Origin: Gekko japonicus
Taxonomy: Eukaryota
Reading direction: 5' to 3'
Length of the DNA stretch: 64,000 bases
Assembly (NCBI RefSeq): GCF_001447785.1
Contig: NW_015171513.1
Location: forward strand, 507,853 to 571,852
Part shown: piece by piece, positions 3,998 through 43,019 of the stretch
Numbering within the stretch: position 1 is the first letter of the stretch
How the letters are laid out: each line of letters opens with the position of its first letter
Notes under the pieces: generated by a model
Seen by the model: only the letters and a program-made list of their open reading frames with translations
Databases searched by the model: none
What the model was told of the DNA's origin: nothing
Translations under genes and position numbers: made by a program

Positions 3998-4822
3998 CCC
4001 GAAGCAACCCTCCCAAGATTTAACAGTCATATTGGTTTCTTGTCTTACTACATCCAGTCCTTACATCTGTATTTTCACAGAGAAGGGCTATACATCTTCT
4101 TTATTTTAGTGTTATTTATTGGAATAATGATTGTAATGTAATGCAGTGAATATTAGAATGTAATGTCATTTAGAATGGTAGATAGAAATGTATTTCTCTG
4201 GTCTGGTGACAGAGGAGACATAAAACTGCAGCTCAAAGAATAGGATGTTGTTACCTCCATGTTTGAGAGGAGATGGATGGAGCGTAACAACAGGGTCTCA
4301 ATTGATTAATCTTAGCATCCCACAATTAAGTAGGATACATTTACACATCAGTCTCCAATTTCTGACATATTTATTTGCTTCACTGTTTCCCCCCTCCCCT
4401 TTGGAATTAAATCCTAACAAATGGTGACTATGTAAACTTAGCTTGTTATTCCTATTTGGTTTGCACATCTTTTAAAACATCTTCATTATGTTGTATGCTA
4501 ATTTGCTGTTCACCCTCTACCAATATGTATGGACTGATAACTTTCATTTCAATGTATCTAGTATGCATGCACATGAAAGCTCATAGCTTGAATAAAACTG
4601 TGTTGGTCTTGAAGATGCCACTGGACTCAAATTTAGTCAAGGAGATTGGTTAAGGTAGGGTTACCAGATGTCCTCTTTTTAGAGGACATATCCTCTTTCT
4701 TTGGTGTCCGTGTTTTTTTTTGTGTGGGGGGCCCCTCTTTTTTAAAAAAACCTGATGAAAATGTTGTATTTAGGTTGGAAGATTAGGAATATTCCTGGTT
4801 AGTAACAATTACCAGAGTTTAA

Positions 4823-5103
4823 AGCCAGTTTGGTGTAGTGGTTAAGTGTGCGGACTCTAATCTGGAAGAACCGGGTTTGATTCCCCACTCCTCCACTTGC
4901 ACCTGCTGATGTGACCTTGGGTCAGTCACAAGCTCTGGCACAGCTGTCCTTGAAAAAGTGCAGTTTGTGTCAGAGTTCTCTCGACCCCACCCACCTCACA
5001 GGGGGTCTGTTGTGGGGAGGGGAAGGGAAAGGGGTTTGTAAACCGCTCTGAGACTCCAAGTGAAGGGCGGGGTATAATTCCAATCTCTTCTTCTTCTTCT
5101 TCT
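4823..5103 (+). mobile_element. Squam3-type SINE, full length
   Basis: tRNA-like head with A box (TGGTGTAGTGG) and B box (GGTTTGATTCC), body, and (TTC)n tail. Confidence 0.9.
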
Positions 5104-5117
5104 AAATGTTGCTGGAA

Positions 5118-5300
5118 AGCCAGCATGAGAGTAGTGGTTAAATATGGACTAGGATATGGGAAATGCCAAGACATACTGCCATGAAGCTAACAGGATGAAC
5201 TTGGACCAGTTACTCTGTGTAACCATCTTCAATGCTGTGAAAATAAAATGGAGGAGGGAAGAATGAGGTATACTGTGGGATGAAAATGATGGGATGAAAA
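5118..5300 (+). mobile_element. Old MIR/Ther1-like SINE
   Basis: Degenerate tRNA head and core. Confidence 0.6.
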
Positions 5301-8037
5301 CATTCTGCTGCACAAAGCACCCCCGATTTTGGTATCTACTTATTTCGTAGCAAGACTATTTAGAAATAAAATAAATGAGCCATATAAAATATATGCATTA
5401 ATAGTCAAAACTGTTTACAGTTTATCAGAGTTAGTTAATTGTTACCTTATTGAAATTTTTAAAGATCAAAGTGGAAATAACTGGTGAGCTGTACGAAGTG
5501 TCACCATTAAGACACTATCTGGAAATTCACAATAGATAAAAAATGACAGAATTTTGCCTATCATCTAGTTTAAGCAGGAAAGAAACATCAAAAGGGTGAT
5601 AGTATCTGATAGGTGTTAGAAGCTGGAATTTCCATTCCCTTTGAAGTTCTATTCGTATATATAATAATGAGATGTTGGGTTTTCCTTCTAGCATGGCCAA
5701 GATTTATGAAATCGAATGTAACTTTTCCGTAGCATCATATGTATTATGCATCCTGCTCCTCTGATAAACACTGGAATACATCCTTTAACTTTTTAAAAAA
5801 AATTATCAACCTCATTGCAAATGCAAAACATTATTTGGAGTATATATTACTCATAAATAATCTTGTGCATGCACAATACCTCTGGTAGAACTTTAGAAGC
5901 TACGTTGCTGAAGCTTCAGGGAATGATTATCTATTCTTAATGCCTTCCTGAGAGAATTGTTTGTTTTAGTTTCACTCAGCTGAATTCCATGTAACTAGAT
6001 ACTTGTCAAACTTTTCACATATTATTTTGCAGATGGTAGGGTTGCACAGTTGTGACGGACCTAATTTAGTTTGTAGAACATTTAACTACTGAAGGTGAAT
6101 GCAACTAATTTGCCTATTAGACATCAGACTGATATTATAAACATATTGTGACATATAACATTTTAGTTACTAAAATAGCTAGGGATCTGAGAATTCCCAC
6201 TATAAAGCTACAATAGTCTGTATAATTTAAGTTTCTAAACTCTGAAGCCGGTCAAAACAATCAGTTAATATTCTGTGGATTGCTTGTAGAGGGAGGATGC
6301 ACAACCCATGCCATTAAGTGGAATTTTGGACACTACAGAACCCACAGAAACATGATTAAAATGTACTTTGTACTCCCAGCTACTGTAGCATTACTATCTA
6401 AAGAGGAACTTGACTTTCAAATATAGCTTGGGAATTTGGACAGCTTTCCTGCGCATTGCAAGCATCAACACAACACAACAAGCAATATATGGTACATGGC
6501 TGCAAGTAATGTCTGAAGCTGTTGTAACTCAATGCCGGATATTGATTAAATTACAACAGCTTCAGACATCACTTGCAGCCATGTACCGTATCTATAGATC
6601 AGTGTCTGCCCATCCGTCGTCTGTCTGTCTGTCTGTCTATCTGGTGATAGTGATGGACTCTCGCTCTCTGTTGACACGTATCTTCCATGTTTGTATCAGG
6701 TCACAGAATGATGTGGTGATAAACTGAGATTTCAGTATGGTCGGTTTGAGCATAATGGTCTGTATCCTACCACAGTTTAAAACTTGAGGGCACTTTTTAT
6801 TAAGACGAGAGTCAAGCTTAGTAGGTCACCGTGGAGAGAAGAATTGCCAGAGATCACCCTTCCTTCTTAGAAAAGGGCACTTCACTTTTCTTAACTGCAT
6901 TCAAACCAGTGATCGATTCAGCTCTTGCACTTCTTCATCTTCTTTCTTCTCTTTGTCATGTTGCCCCATGCTTTCATGCTTCTCTCCCCCAGCAAACTAC
7001 TTTTTGCCATTACATCCAATTACATGTTTTTGTTTTTCCCCACCATTACTTTATTATGTAGTAAGCTCTCCTGGCTACCTTTAACATTACTTTGATGACT
7101 CGAAGGTTGATGACTTACAAGGTTTATTTTCAACGTTGGTGAATGAATGGTAGAATAACCTCTCCAACTTTAAGAAGTATTTTTGATAGTAACAATTGAC
7201 TAACAACTACCATAGGATTTTGCAAGTCCCTAACAGCAAAATATATGATAAGCCAAAGTCCTCTTTCTGCCCCACTTCAAGAATGTCATTAGCTAGTGCT
7301 TGTTTTCAGTCCAGGGCCCCTAGACTAGTATCTCCCAACCTGTGAACATAAGCCCAAAAGTAGGTCGTGAAGCCTGTGAGAGTAGAAACCTAGTTTTTGC
7401 AGGTTTATTGAATTGTGTAGGCTCAGGGTTTGTTTTTTTTAAGTGGGTCTGCAAACCAAGAAAATTTGGATTTGTGATTCAAGATACCAAAAATGTTGGT
7501 AGTACTTTATGTAGACGTGTCTGTGAATCTCCTGCTTCTGTATTTACTCCAATAACCTACACATACACACACCCGGACATCTTCATAAGGTCCAGAGTGA
7601 TCAATTAATGTGTCTGGTAATGTTTGAGTAGTGTAATGAATTACACTATTGAAAACTGTAAATAGTTCTACATGGTAATAATAAAATAAAATACAGAGGA
7701 AGCAGAAATAGCTTGAAACCACAAGGCCCAATTAGCTTTGGTCTTGCACAGAAGTACATTTGGATCTTAAGATATGTACTGTTTCTTGCCTGATAACAGT
7801 GGTGGCAAGAATAACTCGTTATGTTTGTATAAAGTCAGTGAAACAAATCTCTTCTTAGGCATTTTCAAGACATTAACGTCACTAGTAACATTTATGATAG
7901 CAAGGTTAATCTTCCAAACAATTTATTAGACTTCTAATTTTGTGTGACAGTTCAACTTTTCTGTATGTTGTTTTTGGTGTCCTAATGAAAGATAGTAAAT
8001 TATTGGGTAGTTAATTGTTCTTTATATTACTTTCAGT

Positions 8038-8690
8038 ATGTTTATTGTAGTCAAAGACTATAATACAGCGAATAGAGTTAATGTAACAGCTATCAGAATA
8101 AAATAATATATCTTATGGCAGGGTATGTTATAAAACACTAAAACATTAAAATATTTACAAATTCCAATGCAATTCAGATAAAATCAAATCCAGCCCATTA
8201 ATTATAGTCCCTCCCCTTTCTCCTAATACAATACACTAACCAACCAGATTTAGCCACCATACGAGTTATATTCGGATTTTTATCTGCCAACATAATTGAG
8301 AGAAGTCCCCCTACCACACTCTGGATATGGCTTTATAATGGGATCTATAAATATCTCTCTATTGTGCTGGTATAATCTACAGTCAAAAACACATGTTTCA
8401 GAGTTCCTTCTCCTTTTCCACAAACACATTCTCTTTGTGTGGTTTTATTATATCTGGCTTCTAAAATGGCAGAGGGCAAAGCATTATATCTTAAAATTGC
8501 AAAAATTCTTCTATGTTTGGCGTTCTCTAAAGTTTTGACATATGGTCCCAACACTAGCTTATATTGTCTTTATTTTCTTGAGAAAGGACACTCTTCCTCT
8601 TTTCATACTTACCAGTTAGATCTGAATAATAAAGACTTGACCCACTTCTAAATAGTTAGTGGAGAGCTTCTTGTAATAAAATACCAGAAA
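8038..8690 (-). mobile_element. RTE-X-like LINE 3' fragment
   Basis: Minus ORF RRIFAILRYNALPSAILEARY..RECVCGKGEGTLKHVF; 3' end gtctttgactacaataaac. Confidence 0.7.
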
Positions 8691-8719
8691 CAACCTCAGC
8701 CCACAGGTCAAAGCCCCCC

Positions 8720-8950
8720 CCCCCATCCTGTCCTTGGCACTGTTCATTACCTTTTTCCAGCGCCTTGCTGTCCTGGATATTGCTTGGCACTGGAATTTCT
8801 TGGGGTAATTACTCTATGAGGCGTGGGTTTTGGTTTTATCTGCTATTGCTATTTATTGTTTTCATTGTTTGTTGGTTTTATGTTGTGAGCCTCCCTGAGC
8901 CCATTTTTGGGGTAGGGTGGGGTATAAATGTAATAAATAAAATTAAATTT
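8720..8950 (+). mobile_element. L2-type 3' tail
   Basis: tgtgagcctccctgagccc..gggtggggtataaat..aataaa. Confidence 0.55.
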
Positions 8951-9044
8951 TAAAAACTTGATAGATCTTCAGAAAGTGGTCATGTTCTATTTTTGCAGTT
9001 AAATAATGTGCTGTAAGTTGTAGTGAACCTATGGAAAATATGTA

Positions 9045-14770: not shown

Positions 14771-15238
14771 AAGGCAGAAACAAAAAGGGAAAAAAACTGA
14801 ACCTTACAAGAAACTCCAGAACCAAACAAAGGTTAGTGAAAAGGAGGGCCAATATTAAAACCTTTCCATAAAAAATAAAAAGAGGTACATGTATTTATTA
14901 ATAATCACAAATTTTAAAACATATATAGAGGCCCATTTACAACCAATATATATAAAATATACAAAATATACAAATATTAAGGGCTGACAAAGTTGACCTT
15001 ACGCGTTTCGGCTAAATAGGCCTTCCTCAGAGGTCATACATATGTAGCAAGATGGTTAATAATTATATTCATATAAACACAATCAGACATATATACGAAG
15101 TGTAGATTCAATCAGGACCATTAAGTAAATTGTTCAAAAGTAAAATCACCAGGCACAGGATAAATATGCACATAAGACCTTTAAAGTGCAATCACTAGCC
15201 CAGTGATTATAAAATAAACTTGTGGTTCAAAAATTTCC
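14771..15238 (-). mobile_element. AT-rich PLE-like terminal repeat insertion
   Basis: Contains a hammerhead followed by AATAAA on the minus strand; possible TSD ttctacata/ttctatata. Confidence 0.55.
14994..15036 (-). ncRNA. Intact minimal type-I hammerhead ribozyme
   Basis: Minus strand reads TGACCT-CTGAGGA-A-GGC(CTATTTA)GCC-GAAA-CGCG-TA-AGGTCA: 6-bp stem I, palindromic stem III ACGCGT, GUA cleavage triplet. Confidence 0.85.
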
Positions 15239-26234: not shown

Positions 26235-26365
26235 ACCTTGATACAGAGAGTACTCTCTTTCTGTGTTATACCTCTGAGGATGCCAGTCACAGCTACTGGC
26301 GAAACGTCAGGTCCTACAATGCCAAGACCACAGCCAGACAACCCGGAAAATCTACAACAGCTAGT
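26235..26365 (+). mobile_element. Poseidon-type PLE terminal fragment
   Basis: Hammerhead followed by caagaccacagccagacaacccggaaaa, which resembles lizard Penelope ends. Confidence 0.75.
26270..26312 (+). ncRNA. Intact minimal type-I hammerhead ribozyme
   Basis: ACCT-CTGAGGA-T-GCCAGT(CACAGCT)ACTGGC-GAAA-CG-TC-AGGT, with a GUC triplet. Confidence 0.85.
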
Positions 26366-35869: not shown

Positions 35870-37013
35870 ATATATCTAATTTTCAACCTGTCCCCATCTG
35901 TGGATAATGAAATCTGGACACTGAAGCCGTGAACAGACAGGACAGATCTTTATACAAACCAGAGAAGATCCTAGGTTTGCTGCACTATTGCCTGCACAGA
36001 AAAACCCTCTTGAATAATTCAGTTTTGCATAGTTTGTGGAAAGCCAAGAGAGTGAGAGCCTTCTTGACTTGCTCAGACAATCCATTCCACAAGGTAGGGG
36101 CCACAATGGAGAAGATACATGTATGGGCAGTTGTTGATTTTGTCCATTTGCAGGTTAGCACCTGCAGAAGACCCTGCTCCAATGAACAAAGTTCTTGTGG
36201 CGGAACATAGAGGGAGGGACAGTCTCACAGATATGAATGTCCAAGCCCATGAAGTATGTGATAGCCAGTACTTTAAACTGAGCCCCGTAACTGATGGGCA
36301 ACCAGTGGAGTGACTGTAGAATGGGATTAACAGGCATGTTCCACCTAGTATCCTGTAATAGCTGAGCTGTGGCATTCTGCATCAACTTGAGTTTCCAATT
36401 TGATTTTGAGGGGAAACCAATATATAGTCAATGTATGTAATAGCTGAGCTGTGGCATTCTGCATCAACTTGAGTTTCCAATTTGATTTTGAGGGGAAACC
36501 AATGTATAGTCTTAATGTGGCTATGGCATGGATCCAGGTGGCCTAATCAGCTGTATCAAATTAAGACACCATTTTTGAGCTAGGCTGAAAGCCTTTTTTG
36601 TAAGTGCATTAACTTGCTTCTCCATCAAAGATGTTGGGTCCAGTACAACCCTGAGGCTCTTAACTGTAGAAGCAAGGGTCAGCTTAACTCCATCGAAAGT
36701 GGGGAGCAAAATGTCCTTCAAGTCCTCTCCCTTCCCAAGTAGCATTATTTTTGTCTTTCCAGGGTTTAGTTTCAATTTGTTCACTCTTAGCCATTTAACC
36801 ATTGCAGCCAGGGACTGGTTTTGGACCTCTATTGCATCACCAGTAAAAAACAATCAATATATATATAGCTGAGTATTGTCAGCATATTTATGCAGCCAAC
36901 CCCAAAACTACAAATGATTCGGCCTAAGGGCTTTACATAAAGACTGAAGAGCATTAAAGATAGGACCCAGTGGGACCTCACAGGATAGGTCCCACACTGA
37001 TGATAACTGTTCT
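35870..37013 (-). mobile_element. L2 LINE ORF2 3' portion
   Basis: WLRVNKLKLNPGKTK, QNATAQLL..LQSLHWLPI, FSIVAPTLWNGL..CKTELF. Confidence 0.9.
36354..36519. repeat. 82-bp tandem duplication in L2
   Basis: 36354-36435 is near-identical to 36436-36519. Confidence 0.9.
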
Positions 37014-37541: not shown

Positions 37542-39405
37542 CTACTGGGTCAAATGTAGAAAGGCAACAAATTCTTCCTTGATATATACTGCAAAGGAAT
37601 CACATCAACAGTAGTTCAAACCCAATAAATTCAAGACATGATTTACAAAGGTCCACAGAAAAGTCTTCTGGATGCAGACAGCAGTGTTGAATGGTTAAAC
37701 AAAAAAAGATTTCAATAAGATGTTCCATCATAAAAGTACATGTGAAGAAATGACTATTCTACCCTCCCTCTTCTGAAAGTGCAGAAAAACTAATACCACA
37801 GATAGTCTGCATGAATAGCTGCAAATGCTAAACAAAAACTCATATGTTCTTACCCATACATGGCAATTATTTGAGCTGTTTCATGTGTACAAGAAAGAAT
37901 CTCAGGGATCTCAGCATAGCAGAGGGAGGAGGATGTGAATCATGCTTTCTCTTTTGACATATTATTTCTTATAACATATGATGCATGTGAAAAAATTCTA
38001 TATACTGGGTAAATCAATGCTTCACTGCAACACTTCTCACATTACTGTTTTCAGGCATGGTCTTGGTCCTCAGTCATGCCCACAATTAAGGCTGCGTCAG
38101 CACCAACAATTCACCCTGCATTTTTTTTTTTTGGTTGGCCCTCTTTGGCTCTGCACATTCCAATACTACCTTTTGCATACTTTCAATTGATCTGTTGTAA
38201 ACAGCAGCACTAGGACTCCTTTGGTTTGGTTTTTACCAGTGTACCGTCATAATGCCTAGAATGCAGCATCTTCCTTGTGCATCATACCTTTGGGATATAG
38301 TGCACCTGCGCTGACCCCGATCGATACTTCTTAGAAAGCGAAAGGGATTTTCGCGCCCACTCCCCAGTCACTTGCCGGCCCCACTGCGCATGACTAGGGG
38401 AGGGGCACGACAATCCCACCAGTTCTCTTCTGACCACCGCGCTGGTAGGATCTTCTCTACTTTGATCGGTAATTTTTCTGGCTTTAGGGCCTTTTCTTCT
38501 TCTCTTCAGAGTTTTTTTTGTTAAGTGAAAGGACAATATTGTTACCTGGTTTTGCTTTTTTTGGACTCTTTCGTTTTGGTCTCCCTTGCTAGACAGACCC
38601 CTATGGACAAGAGGTGGGGTTTCTTTAAACGGTGCCTGAAGTGCAGTGATAAAATCGCCCCCACCCCCTGACAGACACTCACTTTGCCTTCTGTGCCTTG
38701 GGGAATTGCACCAAGTGGACTCCTGTGCCCATTGCACGAAGTTCTCGAAGCAGACGAGAAAGAACACAGCTGCTAGACTTTGCGTTGCACTTTTGGAATT
38801 AGCTCTCTCACCGATGTCGTCATCGCAGGACACTTCAGGACACGCTTCTATGTCTACTCCCACCTCGGGATTGATGGCCACATTGTCTCTGATACTGACT
38901 CACTCCGATGTCGACCGCCTGATGTCAGTCCGAAGCCCATACTCCCACTGAAAAATTCAAGGAGGGCAAGGACGACAAGAAGCATAAGAAACCCCCCCTG
39001 TGCAAACTCCGCTGATCCCTCAGAGGGCCATGGAACCTAATCCTGGTGGGGCTGCTTCACTTGACTCCACGTGCCATGAGCAGCAACAAGGTGTACCCCT
39101 TTCACCTTCACTGCATCCTATCCAGCTCACTGACTCTTAGCATGATATGGACTTAACACAGATCTCCTGGTCTTCCAGTGTTGAAAGCCTACACTCAGAC
39201 CATTGAGCTGGCACCTTTGTGTATCCTTCACTGCTTCGATCCGACGATCGAGACTGGCCATCGGGACCGATCCATCTGCTGCTACCCCCTTGGGATCAAC
39301 GGCAATGGCAATACATGTATGGGGCCTATCCCTTTACAAGCGGCATGCCATGGTTCCTGCCCCAACCGGTGGAATGGGATCGTCAATCCACTTCCTCCTG
39401 ACTTT

Positions 39406-39739
39406 CTTGGTATCGAGACCCTCTCCCGACGCCGAAGTTTGTGAAATCCCAGCTGTTGAGACCGACAGGTAGTATAAATCTACAAAGGGGACCAGCAATT
39501 TAAAGATACAACAATAATGGAAGAAATTGCTGTTAGGTTCACACAATAGCACTGTATAGACAAAAATGAATACTTGGTATCGAGACCCTCTCCCGACGCC
39601 GAAGTTTGTGAAATCCCAGCTGTTGAGACCGACAGGTAGTATAAATCTACAAAGGGGACCAGCAATTTAAAGATACAACAATAATGGAAGAAATTGCTGT
39701 TAGGTTCACACAATAGCACTGTATAGACAAAAATGAATA
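39406..39739. repeat. Identical 167-bp tandem duplication
   Basis: 39406-39572 equals 39573-39739. Confidence 0.95.
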
Positions 39740-39815
39740 AATAAACTTGTTGAGATGACGTTCAATGATGTTTGTAATTTTTATATTTTCAGGACAAAGG
39801 ACGTCTGACACTGAA

Positions 39816-39887
39816 GATAGGTGATACGAACATCTCGAGTGGTAGTTCGTTTCGAGACACAACTATTTTTCAACCACAATTCCTATC
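39816..39887 (-). ncRNA. Extended type-I hammerhead-like motif, U3-A8 core (copy 1)
   Basis: GATAG-GAATT-GTGG-TTGAAAA-A-TAG(TTGTGT)CTC-GAAA-CGAAC(13 nt)GTTCG-TA-TCAC-CTATC. Confidence 0.6.
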
Positions 39888-39897
39888 AAAAGCAGAT

Positions 39898-40501
39898 TGC
39901 ATAGGCTTCCGGTCTGGCTCCCACGAATGGCGGACGCATCCTCGGGTCGCTCCCGAGGGCGTCTCGTCCGCCCGCGGTGGAGGAGGGAATCCGCGCGAGC
40001 AGAGACCCGAACGAGCCCCTCAGGAAGAGAGGAGCTCGGATCCGGGGCGCTTTAGGGCGTACTAGGGGGGAGTCTCTTTTTNNNNNNNNNNNNNNNNNNN
40101 NNNNNNNNNNNNNNNNNNNNNNNNNNNNNNNNNNNNNNNNNNNNNNNNNNNNNNNNNNNNNNNNNNNNNNNNNNNNNNNNNNNNNNNNNNNNNNNNNNNN
40201 NNNNNNNNNNNNNNNNNNNNNNNNNNNNNNNNNNNNNNNNNNNNNNNNNNNNNNNNNNNNNNNNNNNNNNNNNNNNNNNNNNNNNNNNNNNNNNNNNNNN
40301 NNNNNNNNNNNNNNNNNNNNNNNNNNNNNNNNNNNNNNNNNNNNNNNNNNNNNNNNNNNNNNNNNNNNNNNNNNNNNNNNNNNNNNNNNNNNNNNNNNNN
40401 NNNNNNNNNNNNNNNNNNNNNNNNNNNNNNNNNNNNNNNNNNNNNNNNNNGAAATACCTCCCCTTTTTAGGGGAGTTAATAAAGTCTTTATTTAAAAAAA
40501 A
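39898..40501 (+). mobile_element. L1-like insertion: CpG-rich 5'UTR, gap, poly-A end, 10-bp TSD
   Basis: Starts cttccgg..aatggcgg; AATAAA and A-tail follow the gap; AAAAGCAGAT at 39888-39897 and 40502-40511. Confidence 0.7.
40082..40450. other. Assembly gap
   Basis: Run of N. Confidence 1.
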
Positions 40502-40640
40502 AAAAGCAGATGGAATACAATGAGCTCCTGAACAATATACATAGGCTATGATTGAATTAATAAAGAATAAAGTTACATACAGATTCTCTGGTTGTCTTTT
40601 TGTGTACAGAGGTAGTATCAATCTTTTCCTGTATTATACA

Positions 40641-40871
40641 NNNNNNNNNNNNNNNNNNNNNNNNNNNNNNNNNNNNNNNNNNNNNNNNNNNNNNNNNNNN
40701 NNNNNNNNNNNNNNNNNNNNNNNNNNNNNNNNNNNNNNNNNNNNNNNNNNNNNNNNNNNNNNNNNNNNNNNNNNNNNNNNNNNNNNNNNNNNNNNNNNNN
40801 NNNNNNNNNNNNNNNNNNNNNNNNNNNNNNNNNNNNNNNNNNNNNNNNNNNNNNNNNNNNNNNNNNNNNNN
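40641..40871. other. Assembly gap
   Basis: Run of N. Confidence 1.
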
Positions 40872-41271
40872 CTATAGAAGACTACAGACTATAATATAAT
40901 GCTATGTAATATTAGAGAATCCACATTGTATATGTTTTGTAGTTTTGTCCTTAGCCTGATGCATCTATCAATTTGTGCTAAAGTTATATGTACTGGTAAG
41001 TTGGCCATCCTTGCATGCACAAGCAATTTACCTTGTTTGCATTTTGCACCTATTTAAGGAAATGGATGCTTGTACTCAGTAAGACTTGTTGTCCGGACTG
41101 AAAACTAGTAAGCCTGCGTGCTGTATTATAAACTTGTTAGCCTGTGTGCTGTTGGAACTGTTGTTGGTAAGTTTTGTAACATGAATGTACCATTAATAGG
41201 GATTGAGTTATGCAACTTGCTTTTGTTCTCATATCATGTTTTGTATATTACAGGAAAAGATTGATACTTTT

Positions 41272-41339
41272 GATAGGAATTGTGGTTGAAAAAGAGTTCT
41301 CGAAACGAACTACCACTCGAGATGTTCGTATCACCTATC
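41272..41339 (+). ncRNA. Extended type-I hammerhead-like motif, U3-A8 core (copy 2)
   Basis: GATAG-GAATT-GTGG-TTGAAAA-A-GAG(TT)CTC-GAAA-CGAAC(TACCACTCGAGAT)GTTCG-TA-TCAC-CTATC. Confidence 0.65.
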
Positions 41340-43019
41340 TTCAGTGTCAGATGTCCTTTGTCCTGAAAATATAGAAATTACAAACATCATTGAACGTCAT
41401 CTCAACAAGTTATTTATTCATTTTTGTTCTTTCCATTATTGTTGAGACCGACAGGTAGACCAGCTAAACCACTGCCTCTGATAGTCCCCAAGTTTAAAGA
41501 TCCATCGGAACCAATCCCATCGACACCGGTGTTGCCTATTTCTTTTTCTGAACCATCTGAGCATTCCACCTCTTATGACACCTCCTCCCATTCAGGAGAC
41601 GAGAACCCTGATCCTCCGGTGGAACCCTTGCCACCTCAGCAAGTGGGCGACGATCTCCCAATTTCTCAGTCGGGGGATCTAAAATCCTATGGGGATTTCA
41701 TCAAGCGGATGGCCAACATGCCCTCCTTCCCCTCTGCTTTTGGTCCTCTTGGGGTTTTTTGCTCTGAGACTGATGGCAGCAGTCAGAAGGAACTGGCAGG
41801 ATTGTCATGCCCCTTCCCTAGTCACACACAGTGGGGCCGGTGCGTGACTGGGGAGTGGGCACAAAAATTCCTTTTGCTTTCTAAGAAGTACTGATTGGGG
41901 TCGGCGCAGGCGCACTATATCCCAAAGGTGTGTATGCACAGATGACCACTCGGAGATCATCAGTAACAGGTAAGCAACCTGTCTTTCAACCCTCACACAC
42001 ATACACAAGACCTCACTGGATGGGCTTGGGCAAATTCTCTCTCTCTTGCTTGCTATGAAGATAAATGCAGATAAAAACAACTCGCTACTTTTTGTTTAGA
42101 CTGCATTCCTGCTGCTAGAGATTGTCCTCTAGATAATTTGTGTATCGTACCTATGAGTGCCCATTAGCAGAAGTAATCTGAACAGCTGCACCCAGGGCCG
42201 GTGCCAGGGTTTTTTTTGCACACTAGGCGAGACTACCTTCTGGCACCCCTCCCCCCGTGCACCCGCAAATTTTAAAACATAAATGCATTTTAGGAAGGCT
42301 AAAAAACTGCTTGTGCAGCTGCCCTTGTGGAGGCTGCTGTGATGGAAGGATATGGTGGGGGGGATAGGGAAGGAGGAGGAGAAGGAGGCGGGGGAGCAAG
42401 GCTGCGATCCATGTGTGGAACCGAAGAGGAGGTGGAGAAAGGGGCTCTTGTCCGCCTCTCTCTCCGGCTGCCCCAGCTTTAGGACTCACAGCCAGTGGGC
42501 ACTCCTGGCCCGGGGGTGGTGAGGGGGAAGGGAAAAAAAAGACATAAGCCACTGTAGTTGGCGCTAACTGGAGAAGCTGCCCAGGCTCCTTGGGTGGCTG
42601 CTGGCATCGAGCCGGGACTTTCCCCCTCATTGGGCAGGGCCACAGAGGACTCTCAGGGAGCCAAGCTAGCATGGTGTGTGTGTGAGACTCTCCAGCTGTG
42701 CCTACCTTCGTCTCCCGCCCACCAGGTGCCAGTGGCGCGTAAGCATCTCCTGTGTTGCTCTGCTGCTTGGCCTCAGCTTCCTTGCCCTCCTGTGATTCTT
42801 GGCGGGACTATGTTCCTCCTGCTGCTGCTGTGCCTCTGCTGCTCAGGCTGGAGCCTGCTAGCGCCCAACCAGGCACGGCGGGAGTGCTCGGCCGGCCTTG
42901 GGAGAACCAGCAGCGGAGGAGGAGGCAGGAGCCAGCCAGCGGTGGTGGGGAGGGGAGGGGCGGGCTCGGAAGCCAGCTGAAACACCGTTCTGGGGCGTTC
43001 CACCCCCAAAATAACCTTG

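What the first reader, a model, noticed from the sequence alone, without database searches (positions are those of the whole stretch)
39816..41339. Hammerhead-like ribozyme with a compensated U3-A8 core, present in both inverted repeats of an unrecognised retroelement
Seen: both repeats (39816-39887 minus, 41272-41339 plus) fold as a type-I hammerhead. Stem I is GTGG/TCAC, a 5-nt bulge, then GATAG/CTATC. The core is UUGAAAA instead of CUGANGA. Stem II is GAG/CTC, then GAAA, a full 6-bp stem III (ACGAAC/GTTCGT) and a GUA triplet, predicting a cut after 41330. Known: C3 and G8 form a tertiary Watson-Crick pair and U3:A8 is the compensatory swap; vertebrate PLE hammerheads are usually minimal, with a 1-2 bp palindromic stem III. 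Inference: both core changes occur in both copies while each copy has its own stem-II damage, so the family consensus probably has U3-A8 and could cleave as a monomer. Searches for CTGANGA would miss it.
Basis: partly seen in the sequence, partly recalled or inferred. Interest (0 to 1): 0.85.

Follow-up and report, generated by a model that had tools for sequence, protein, structure and literature searches.

The report
Penelope-type hammerhead variant in fold-back retroelement
Two inverted, truncated copies of a very abundant Penelope-like retroelement each carry a hammerhead-ribozyme-like motif with a U3:A8 core; this core swap is already published, and both local copies look like relics.

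Summary
The sequence is there. Two inverted arms, about 95% alike, each can be drawn as a type-I hammerhead cutting after 41330 (+) or 39825 (-).

The element has PLE architecture:
- two inverted 5'-truncated copies with their 3' ends facing outward
- one 14-19 bp target duplication
- a 36-nt extension at one end only
- retained GT-AG introns
- the motif about 110 nt from each 3' end

Reads show a high-copy family. RNA reads show the motif strand is transcribed and spliced, and one splice acceptor lies inside stem I.

Evidence against activity: the hammerhead fold is about 7 kcal/mol above the predicted optimum, no covariation could be tested, and no RNA ends pile up at the predicted cut. Rfam finds nothing, but it also misses a canonical minimal hammerhead in this window.

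Natural U3:A8 covariation was published in 2011, and in PLEs in 2014. The scan has noted U3-A8 hammerheads elsewhere in this genome. Verdict: a probable new member of a known kind, catalysis untested.

The parts
39621..39639 (+). Left copy of the target-site duplication (19 nt; 14 nt if the first 5 belong to the element end). Also present at 39454-39472 inside a 167-nt, 100% identical tandem duplication.
   Evidence: exact 19-mer at 39621-39639 and 41440-41458. One reading frame of the host repeat runs from the left flank across into the right flank.
39640..39675 (-). 36-nt extension at the outer end of the left arm only. It is either a PLE 'tail' or a rearranged piece of target.
   Evidence: alignment: the left arm runs 36 nt past the point where the right arm ends. 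PLE tails of 30-40 bp at one end are described in PMC8557442. It shares a 6-mer and a 9-mer with the right flank, so the alternative is not excluded.
39676..39892 (-). Left arm: the 3'-terminal part of the retroelement copy on the minus strand.
39816..39887 (-). Hammerhead-like motif, left copy. U3 is 39873, A8 is 39868, and the predicted cut is after 39825. Stem II has U instead of G at 10.1.
39898..40501 (+). Nested poly(A)-ended retro-insert inside the left arm's intron. It contains assembly gap 40082-40450 and is flanked by a 10-nt duplication (39888-39897 / 40502-40511).
   Evidence: DNA contigs of other copies lack it and join the two sides directly (loose end at 41267).
40581..40628 (-). 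48-nt exon of the left arm, with a GT donor at 40580-40579. The intron runs to the AG at 39884-39883.
   Evidence: coordinates. RNA reads of related copies join this exon's end to the base equivalent to 41277.
40872..41166 (+). Unique inner part upstream of the right arm. RNA depth is exon-like at about 41096-41166. Other genomic copies join 41206 back to a 40872-like sequence.
   Evidence: no inverted partner; depth table, record 1, loose end at 41206.
41167..41253 (+). Retained GT-AG intron.
   Evidence: 17 and 16 RNA reads in two runs stop at 41167 and continue with the exon that starts at 41254. DNA contigs run through the intron.
41254..41276 (+). Remnant of the 48-nt exon (41254-41268) followed by the last 8 nt of the next intron. 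The acceptor AG is 41275-41276. The right arm has lost the rest.
41272..41339 (+). Hammerhead-like motif, right copy. U3 is 41286, A8 is 41291, the extra A is 41293, G10.1 is 41294, GAAA is 41302-41305, stem III is 41305-41310 / 41324-41329, and A17 is 41330.
41340..41439 (+). 3'-terminal region of the right arm. It lacks a 35-nt segment that the left arm and other genomic copies have.
   Evidence: (loose end at 41427; depth falls from about 19,000 to 381 at 41432).
41440..41458 (+). Right copy of the target-site duplication.
   Evidence: Contigs of the host repeat family start aligning at 41440 (record 2).

Best explanation
This is a fold-back insertion of a Penelope-like retroelement (PLE) into another repeat.

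How it arose (inferred): two 5'-truncated copies of one high-copy, probably non-autonomous, pLTR-type unit lie head to head. Their 3' ends face outward and they share one target-site duplication. This is what target-primed reverse transcription on both cut strands by a PLE GIY-YIG/RT enzyme would leave.

What each arm carries (shown): about 110 nt from its 3' end sits the PLE-type type-I hammerhead motif of this family. It has a U3:A8 pair instead of C3:G8, the usual PLE extra nucleotide between A9 and G10.1, a 3-bp helix II that starts G:C, and a 6-bp helix III whose loop holds the palindrome CUCGAG. The cut site is GUA.

How it works in source elements: the motif strand is transcribed (shown). 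A retained intron ends inside the distal 5' strand of helix I, so spliced and unspliced RNAs present different helix I forms (shown). The motif presumably self-cleaves multimeric or read-through transcripts, possibly with help from the element's protein (inferred from other PLEs).

At this locus both copies have private helix II changes and the arms are rearranged, so these are most likely inactive relics (inferred).
For: PLE architecture:
- Inverted arms about 95% alike.
- A 19-nt flanking duplication with one host reading frame running across it.
- A 36-nt extension at one end only.
- Assembly gaps and a 100% tandem duplicate beside it.
- These match the published PLE description: an inverted 5'-truncated copy, a 30-40 bp tail at one end, variable target duplication, assembly trouble and intron retention (PMC8557442).
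- An Anolis PLE cuts and extends both DNA strands, and its genomic copies end about 85-92 nt after its hammerhead cut site (PMC11167929). Here that distance is 110 nt.

Family evidence:
- Word depth is 37,000-63,000 at 41288-41335 and about 19,000 on to 41407. It is 4,000-9,000 upstream and 381 just past the end.
- Related copies restore the helix II loop (TGTG or TG put in after 41297).
- Related copies vary at N7, loop II length and the first loop III base (41311), with no listed change in the core or in helices II and III.

- The extra nucleotide between A9 and G10.1.
- The G10.1-C11.1 pair.
- A palindrome in loop 3.
- An intron 3' end at the 5' end of helix I.
- Dual motifs on opposite strands.
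- The three canonical minimal hammerheads in this window all have the extra nucleotide as well; chance gives 0.068 such motifs per window.

Precedent: U3:A8 covariation is natural, and such ribozymes were already shown active in vitro (PMC3088659).

Transcription: splice junctions with GT-AG on the motif strand are seen in two RNA runs.
Against: - No RT or GIY-YIG coding sequence is linked to this family here. A protein search with the arm's 71-aa ORF found nothing.
- The hammerhead fold is about 7 kcal/mol less stable than the MFE, and helix III is rarely formed in the ensemble.
- Helix II is only 3 bp, whereas most metazoan PLE hammerheads have 6-8 bp.
- No covariation could be measured, because other copies could not be fetched.
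- Some related RNA reads diverge right after the cut site (loose ends at 41330 and 41332), in ways that do not obviously keep helix I.
- No pile-up of RNA ends at 41330/41331 (table 6).
- No Rfam hammerhead model matches even on 88 nt at E<=10. The same is true of a canonical-core minimal hammerhead used as a control.
- By motif alone, roughly six such hits with stem III >=6 are expected by chance across the 766 windows read in this genome.
Confidence: 0.6

Rival explanations
1. The element is a PLE-type or other retroelement, but the hammerhead likeness is coincidental. The 41288-41335 block is kept for another reason, such as the RT binding or initiation region, the start of an ORF (there is an ATG at 41321), or splicing signals.
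For: - The MFE and ensemble do not favour the hammerhead.
- There is no covariation and there are no cleavage ends.
- There is no Rfam hit.
- Two frames stay open through the block.
- In the Anolis PLE the protein-binding region lies next to the hammerhead.
- Multiple testing across windows applies.
Against: - All eleven invariant core nucleotides other than the isosteric 3:8 pair are present.
- The PLE-specific extra nucleotide and the G10.1-C11.1 pair are present.
- The motif sits where PLEs carry hammerheads.
- Variation among copies falls on N7 and the loops.
- Canonical PLE hammerheads in this window have the same helix II size and the same extra nucleotide.
Confidence: 0.25
2. One of the two local copies, most plausibly the + copy with G10.1-C11.1 and a 2-bp helix II, is itself an active monomeric ribozyme at this locus.
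For: - Natural hammerheads with only 2 bp in stem II exist (PMC3088659).
- The core, helix III and cut site are intact in the + copy.
Against: - Most of the family has a longer loop II, so the + copy's 4-nt loss is a private deletion.
- The hammerhead fold is disfavoured by 7.5 kcal/mol.
- RNA reads 99%+ alike to this locus are almost absent: 2 and 0 reads (table 1).
- No ends are seen at the cut site.
Confidence: 0.07
3. It is a cut-and-paste DNA transposon or MITE with long terminal inverted repeats, not a retroelement.
For: Long inverted arms flank a short unique centre, with a flanking direct repeat. Another first-stage note (s1-828166) reads it this way.
Against: - The 14-19 bp duplication is longer than the short, fixed-length duplications that known DNA transposon superfamilies leave (my own knowledge, not tested here).
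- The two ends differ by a 36-nt extension.
- Depth rises towards the outer end of the arm, as with 5'-truncated retrocopies.
- Spliced transcripts run outward on the motif strand.
Confidence: 0.08

Closest known systems
U3-A8 minimal hammerheads of Cercyon Penelope-like elements in Schistosoma mansoni (Cervera & de la Pena 2014, PMC4209133)
   Same: - A U3:A8 core in place of C3:G8.
- An extra unpaired nucleotide between A9 and G10.1, and a G10.1-C11.1 pair.
- Type I topology.
- Location in PLE terminal repeats, with pairs on opposite strands a few hundred bp apart.
- High copy number, with most copies solitary or truncated.
   Different: - Those motifs have essentially no helix III and a long helix II (7-8 bp), and are thought to act as dimers.
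- This one has a 6-bp helix III with a 13-nt loop and a 3-bp helix II.
- This one is in a vertebrate.
Drosophila virilis Penelope hammerhead (PMC4209133)
   Same: The 3' end of a retained spliceosomal intron maps at the 5' end of helix I. Spliced and unspliced RNAs therefore have different helix I forms.
   Different: - C3:G8 core.
- A 2-bp helix I.
- A bulged 6-bp helix II.
- A short palindromic helix III.
Poseidon PAc of Anolis carolinensis (PMC11167929)
   Same: - A squamate PLE with its hammerhead close to the 3' end of genomic copies, about 85-92 nt there against 110 nt here.
- The endonuclease cuts and extends both strands.
- A tail signature.
- No RNA-seq ends at the cut site.
   Different: - PAc has a C3:G8 minimal hammerhead with no stem III described.
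- The PAc ORF starts at stem II.
- PAc cleavage needs the protein.
- No ORF is linked to this family here.
Type-I hammerheads with large helix III in PLEs of fungi and protists (PMC4209133), and natural U3:A8 covariants (Perreault et al. 2011, PMC3088659)
   Same: - A stable helix III that would allow action as a monomer.
- U3:A8 covariation, with such ribozymes shown active in vitro.
- Very short stem II tolerated.
   Different: Different hosts and elements. The combination of these features in a vertebrate PLE was not described in the papers I read.

Membership tests
Hammerhead ribozyme (type I) | Core box 1 C3-U4-G5-A6-N7-G8-A9 | tested here: inconclusive
   The sequence is U-U-G-A-A-A-A in both copies. 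U4, G5, A6 and A9 are met. C3 and G8 are both replaced, by the isosteric pair U3:A8, which is a published natural covariation. One extra A follows A9.
Hammerhead ribozyme (type I) | Core box 2 G12-A13-A14, the A15.1-U16.1 pair, and a cut site H17 that is not G | tested here: met
   GAAA is 41302-41305, U16.1 is 41329 and A17 is 41330. The same holds in the minus copy.
Hammerhead ribozyme (type I) | Three helices around the core, with helix I open | tested here: inconclusive
   The helices can be drawn as I 4+5 bp, II 2 bp (+ copy) or 2 bp after a U-C mismatch (- copy), and III 6 bp. The drawing is about 7 kcal/mol above the MFE, and helix III has 3-9% probability in the ensemble.
Hammerhead ribozyme (type I) | Covariation supporting the helices across relatives | not testable with these tools
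   Only two near-identical copies are in the window. The reads tool gives summaries only. No copies were found in metagenome contigs or through proteins.
Hammerhead ribozyme (type I) | Match to the Rfam hammerhead covariance models | tested here: not met
   No hammerhead hit at gathering score, on 2 kb at E<=10, or on 88 nt at E<=10. The control, a canonical-core minimal hammerhead at 15000-15030, is also missed, so this failure carries little weight.
Hammerhead ribozyme (type I) | Site-specific self-cleavage | tested here: inconclusive
   There is no pile-up of RNA read ends at 41330/41331, at a depth of about 20-30 reads (table 6). The same blank is reported for the active Anolis PLE hammerhead. 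A bench assay is needed.
Penelope-like-element hammerhead (Cervera & de la Pena 2014) | [quoted passage not shown] | tested here: met
   The extra A is 41293 in both copies. G10.1-C11.1 is present in the + copy and in related reads, and is U10.1 in the - copy. All three canonical minimal hammerheads in the window share the extra nucleotide.
Penelope-like-element hammerhead (Cervera & de la Pena 2014) | Minimal or palindromic helix III (dimer design) in metazoans | tested here: not met
   Helix III is a 6-bp hairpin with a 13-nt loop. Only the loop contains a palindrome, CUCGAG. This is where it departs from metazoan PLE hammerheads and resembles those of fungi and protists.
Penelope-like retroelement | RT plus GIY-YIG endonuclease ORF | tested here: not met
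   There is no such ORF between or beside the arms. The copy is truncated or non-autonomous, and a link to an autonomous PLE is not shown.
Penelope-like retroelement | Insertion architecture: 5' truncation, an inverted or tandem partial copy, a variable target duplication, a 30-40 bp tail at one end, retained introns, and a hammerhead near the 3' end | tested here: met
   Inverted arms; a 14-19 bp duplication; a 36-nt extension at the left end only (with an alternative reading noted); GT-AG introns with spliced reads; the motif 110 nt from the end. Compared with PMC8557442.

The most novel reading that the evidence does not exclude
A vertebrate Penelope-like lineage whose hammerhead has switched to a U3:A8 core and gained a stable helix III, so that it can cut as a monomer rather than as the dimer assumed for animal PLE hammerheads. 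Its helix I would be remodelled by splicing of a retained intron, making self-cleavage depend on splicing state.
Probability: 0.2. Interest if true: 0.6.

Novelty: new member of a known kind. Interest (0 to 1): 0.35.

Why it matters
The function of hammerheads in Penelope-like elements is still open. The only biochemically studied squamate example needs its protein to cut and leaves no RNA-seq trace.

A family of the order of 10^4 copies with a U3:A8 core, a stable helix III and an intron ending in helix I would be a convenient natural system for two questions:
- whether animal PLE hammerheads can act as monomers;
- whether splicing gates cleavage.

It also shows that CUGANGA descriptors and the Rfam models under-count hammerheads in reptile genomes.

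The core swap itself is published, so the finding extends a known picture rather than changing it.

Tried and rejected
Searches that led nowhere:
- Rfam at gathering score and at E<=10 on 2 kb and on 88 nt gave no hammerhead hit. This is uninformative, because the canonical minimal hammerhead control is also missed.
- A protein search with the arm's 71-aa ORF found no candidate. This says nothing about longer or shorter kin.
- Two exact-pattern scans of metagenome contigs for the family's core and helix III found nothing, as expected for an animal repeat.
- Pfam on five flanking ORFs gave no family apart from a sub-threshold RVT_1 hit (E 0.012, 15.7 bits against a 29.6-bit cut-off) upstream at 36524-36853. 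'DIRS gag', as another note calls the host repeat, is therefore not confirmed.
- Window searches for the downstream sequences seen in related RNA reads found nothing.
- Looking up earlier scan notes by sequence gave a blank, which means nothing.

- I did not fold or build a composite or consensus motif that combines the two arms or the read variants.
- I did not fill or look up the two assembly gaps.

Reading rejected: an assembly artefact as the origin of the inverted repeat. The arms differ by substitutions, indels, a 35-nt segment and a nested insert.

Full report
**What is in the sequence.**
The window holds two inverted arms. 39727-39892 on the minus strand matches 41267-41427 on the plus strand at 95% over 166 nt with gaps. 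The repeat resumes further in, at 40614-40640 against 41242-41268. No third copy is in the window.

- stem I: GTGG/TCAC, a GAATT bulge, then GATAG/CTATC;
- core: TTGAAAA;
- stem II: GAG/CTC;
- GAAA, then ACGAAC/GTTCGT;
- GTA, with A17 at 41330 (39825 on the other arm).

Five As, not four, separate G5 from G10.1, so there is an extra nucleotide (41293) between A9 and helix II. Within the motif the arms differ only in helix II. Position 41294 is G in the plus copy and T in the minus copy, and the plus copy lacks 4 nt of the loop.

**Is it more than chance?**
I wrote a relaxed type-I descriptor: either the C3/G8 or the U3/A8 core, an optional extra nucleotide, helix I of at least 4 bp, helix II of at least 2 bp and helix III of at least 3 bp. 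It hits only the plus copy in the window. It finds 0.11 sites per random 63-kb window, and 0.0084 with helix III of 6 bp or more. That is rare per window. Over the 766 windows of this genome read so far, it still predicts about six chance hits. The motif alone does not settle the matter.

Energy does not help either. The hammerhead drawing scores -6.8 and -6.4 kcal/mol against MFEs of -14.3 and -13.7. Helix III has 3-9% probability in the ensemble, and z-scores are unremarkable.

Rfam gives no hammerhead hit at any threshold, even on 88 nt. A canonical-core minimal hammerhead at 15000-15030 in the same window is equally invisible to Rfam. That blank therefore says little.

**The element.**
The two arms sit inside another repeat, and one reading frame of that repeat runs from the left flank across into the right flank. 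A 19-nt direct repeat brackets the whole structure: 39621-39639 and 41440-41458. It shrinks to 14 nt if the ambiguous 5 nt belong to the element.

- Both arms have their 3' ends outward.
- The left arm runs 36 nt further than the right (39640-39675).
- The left arm carries a 35-nt segment that the right has lost. A DNA contig of another copy shows the family has that segment.
- The left arm's intron holds a nested poly(A)-ended insert with its own 10-nt duplication (39888-39897 / 40502-40511).

This is the published picture of Penelope-like-element (PLE) insertions (PMC8557442). That picture includes heavy 5' truncation, an inverted 5'-truncated copy forming inverted repeats, and a 30-40 bp tail often at one end only. 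It also includes a target duplication of variable length, intron retention, and a tendency to break assemblies. Here there are two gaps and a 167-nt, 100% identical tandem duplicate beside the arms.

The Anolis PLE enzyme cuts and extends both DNA strands, and its genomic copies end about 85-92 nt past its hammerhead cut site (PMC11167929). Here the end lies 110 nt past the predicted cut. No RT or GIY-YIG coding sequence is linked to these arms, so membership rests on architecture.

The 36-nt extension shares a 6-mer and a 9-mer with the right flank. It may be rearranged target rather than a true tail.

**What reads add (two DNA runs as contigs, two RNA runs as raw reads, same species label).**
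Summed word depth, which is not a copy number, is as follows in the first DNA run:

| Region | Depth |
|---|---|
| Upstream of the motif | 4,000-9,000 |
| 41288-41335 | 37,000-63,000 |
| 41336-41407 | about 19,000 |
| Just past the element's end | 381 |

This is a very abundant family, biased towards its 3' end. Part of the step at 41288-41298 is an artefact of clipping at this copy's 4-nt deletion.

- Related copies carry TGTG or TG after 41297. That holds for most DNA depth, and for 9+2 of 11 and 3+6 of 15 RNA reads.
- Most copies have A at 41311, the first base of loop 3.
- Clipped-read consensuses from both RNA runs read through the core. They keep T at position 3 and A at position 8, and differ at N7 (A or G).
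- No alternative letter at 41286 or 41291 is among the best-supported differences, although 105 weaker rows were not shown.
- The variation I can see thus falls on N7, loop II length and loop III, plus one helix I base (41282 G/T).

This pattern fits a constrained hammerhead but is weak evidence. No covariation could be measured.

**Transcription and splicing.**
In both RNA runs, 17 and 16 reads stop at 41167 and continue with the exon that starts at 41254. This defines a GT-AG intron at 41167-41253, while DNA contigs run through it.

Other RNA reads join the end of a 48-nt exon to 41277. That exon is intact on the left arm at 40628-40581 and mostly deleted on the right. The acceptor AG is therefore 41275-41276.

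The motif strand is transcribed in related copies. Spliced and unspliced RNAs differ in helix I, exactly as described for Penelope of Drosophila virilis (PMC4209133).

No pile-up of read ends marks 41330/41331. The same blank was reported for the active Anolis element. Almost no RNA reads match this locus at 99% or more, so the expression seen belongs to relatives.

**Comparison with what is known.**
Cervera and de la Pena (PMC4209133) list four features that recurred in PLE hammerheads without being in their descriptor:
- families with compensatory changes;
- the G10.1-C11.1 pair;
- palindromic 15.2-16.2 or loop 3.

The second and third are met here. The fourth is met partly, through CUCGAG in loop 3. 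The three canonical minimal hammerheads I found in this window (26274+, 15030-, 2063-; chance 0.068 per window) all have the extra nucleotide as well, and one has a 3-bp helix II.

The same paper reports a U3-A8 core in about 1,300 Schistosoma PLE hammerheads, and paired motifs on opposite strands 100-700 bp apart. Perreault et al. (PMC3088659) had already reported natural C3:G8 to U3:A8 covariation, cited earlier proof that such ribozymes are active in vitro, and noted natural stem II helices of only two base pairs.

The core swap is therefore known. In the papers I read, what is not described for a vertebrate PLE is the full 6-bp helix III, which would allow a monomer to fold. It resembles the PLE hammerheads of fungi and protists.

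First-stage notes of this scan list several other U3-A8 hammerheads and fold-back PLE inserts elsewhere in this genome. These are unchecked leads, not support.

**Verdict.**
Most likely (0.6) this is a relic fold-back insertion of a high-copy PLE-type unit. Its hammerhead belongs to a U3:A8, long-helix-III variant family, and both local copies carry private helix II changes.

The main rival (0.25) is that the block is conserved for another reason and the hammerhead likeness is coincidental.

Catalysis, covariation and the link to an autonomous PLE remain untested.

Noticed in passing
window 39406-39739: A 167-nt unit is repeated in tandem at 100% identity (39406-39572 and 39573-39739). It spans the host flank, the target duplication, the 36-nt extension and the tip of the left arm. 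It is either a very recent duplication or an assembly artefact at a hard PLE structure.
   Followed up: partly
window 26274-26308 (+), 15030-15000 (-), 2063-2034 (-): Three canonical-core (CUGAGGA) minimal hammerheads, each with an extra nucleotide after A9. Chance gives 0.068 per window. None is reported by Rfam at gathering score over the window, and the 15030 one is not found even at E<=10 on 71 nt.
   Followed up: partly
window 39898-40501: A poly(A)-ended retro-insert with a GC-rich 5' part, an AATAAA signal and a 10-nt target duplication, nested in the left arm's intron. It contains the assembly gap 40082-40450. Its identity was not determined.
   Followed up: no
window 38282-38450 (-) and 41790-41894 (+): The two flanks encode near-identical peptide stretches in inverted orientation (ELVGLSCPSPSHAQWGRQVTGEWARK... 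and ELAGLSCPFPSHTQWGRCVTGEWAQK...). This suggests a larger inverted repeat in the host element.
   Followed up: no
window 40872-41206: A high-depth DNA contig of another copy joins 41206 to a sequence like 40872-40901. The roughly 335-nt inner part may therefore be tandemly arranged or permuted elsewhere in the genome. It has no hammerhead-like motif.
   Followed up: no
window 41321 and downstream: An ATG sits in loop 3 / helix III, 9 nt before the predicted cut. In some related RNA reads a 1-nt length difference puts it in frame with a ...DVLC... stretch that stays open to the end of the read, where those reads have diverged from this locus at 41330. It may be the ORF start of full-length relatives. 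In this copy the frame stops after 14 codons.
   Followed up: partly
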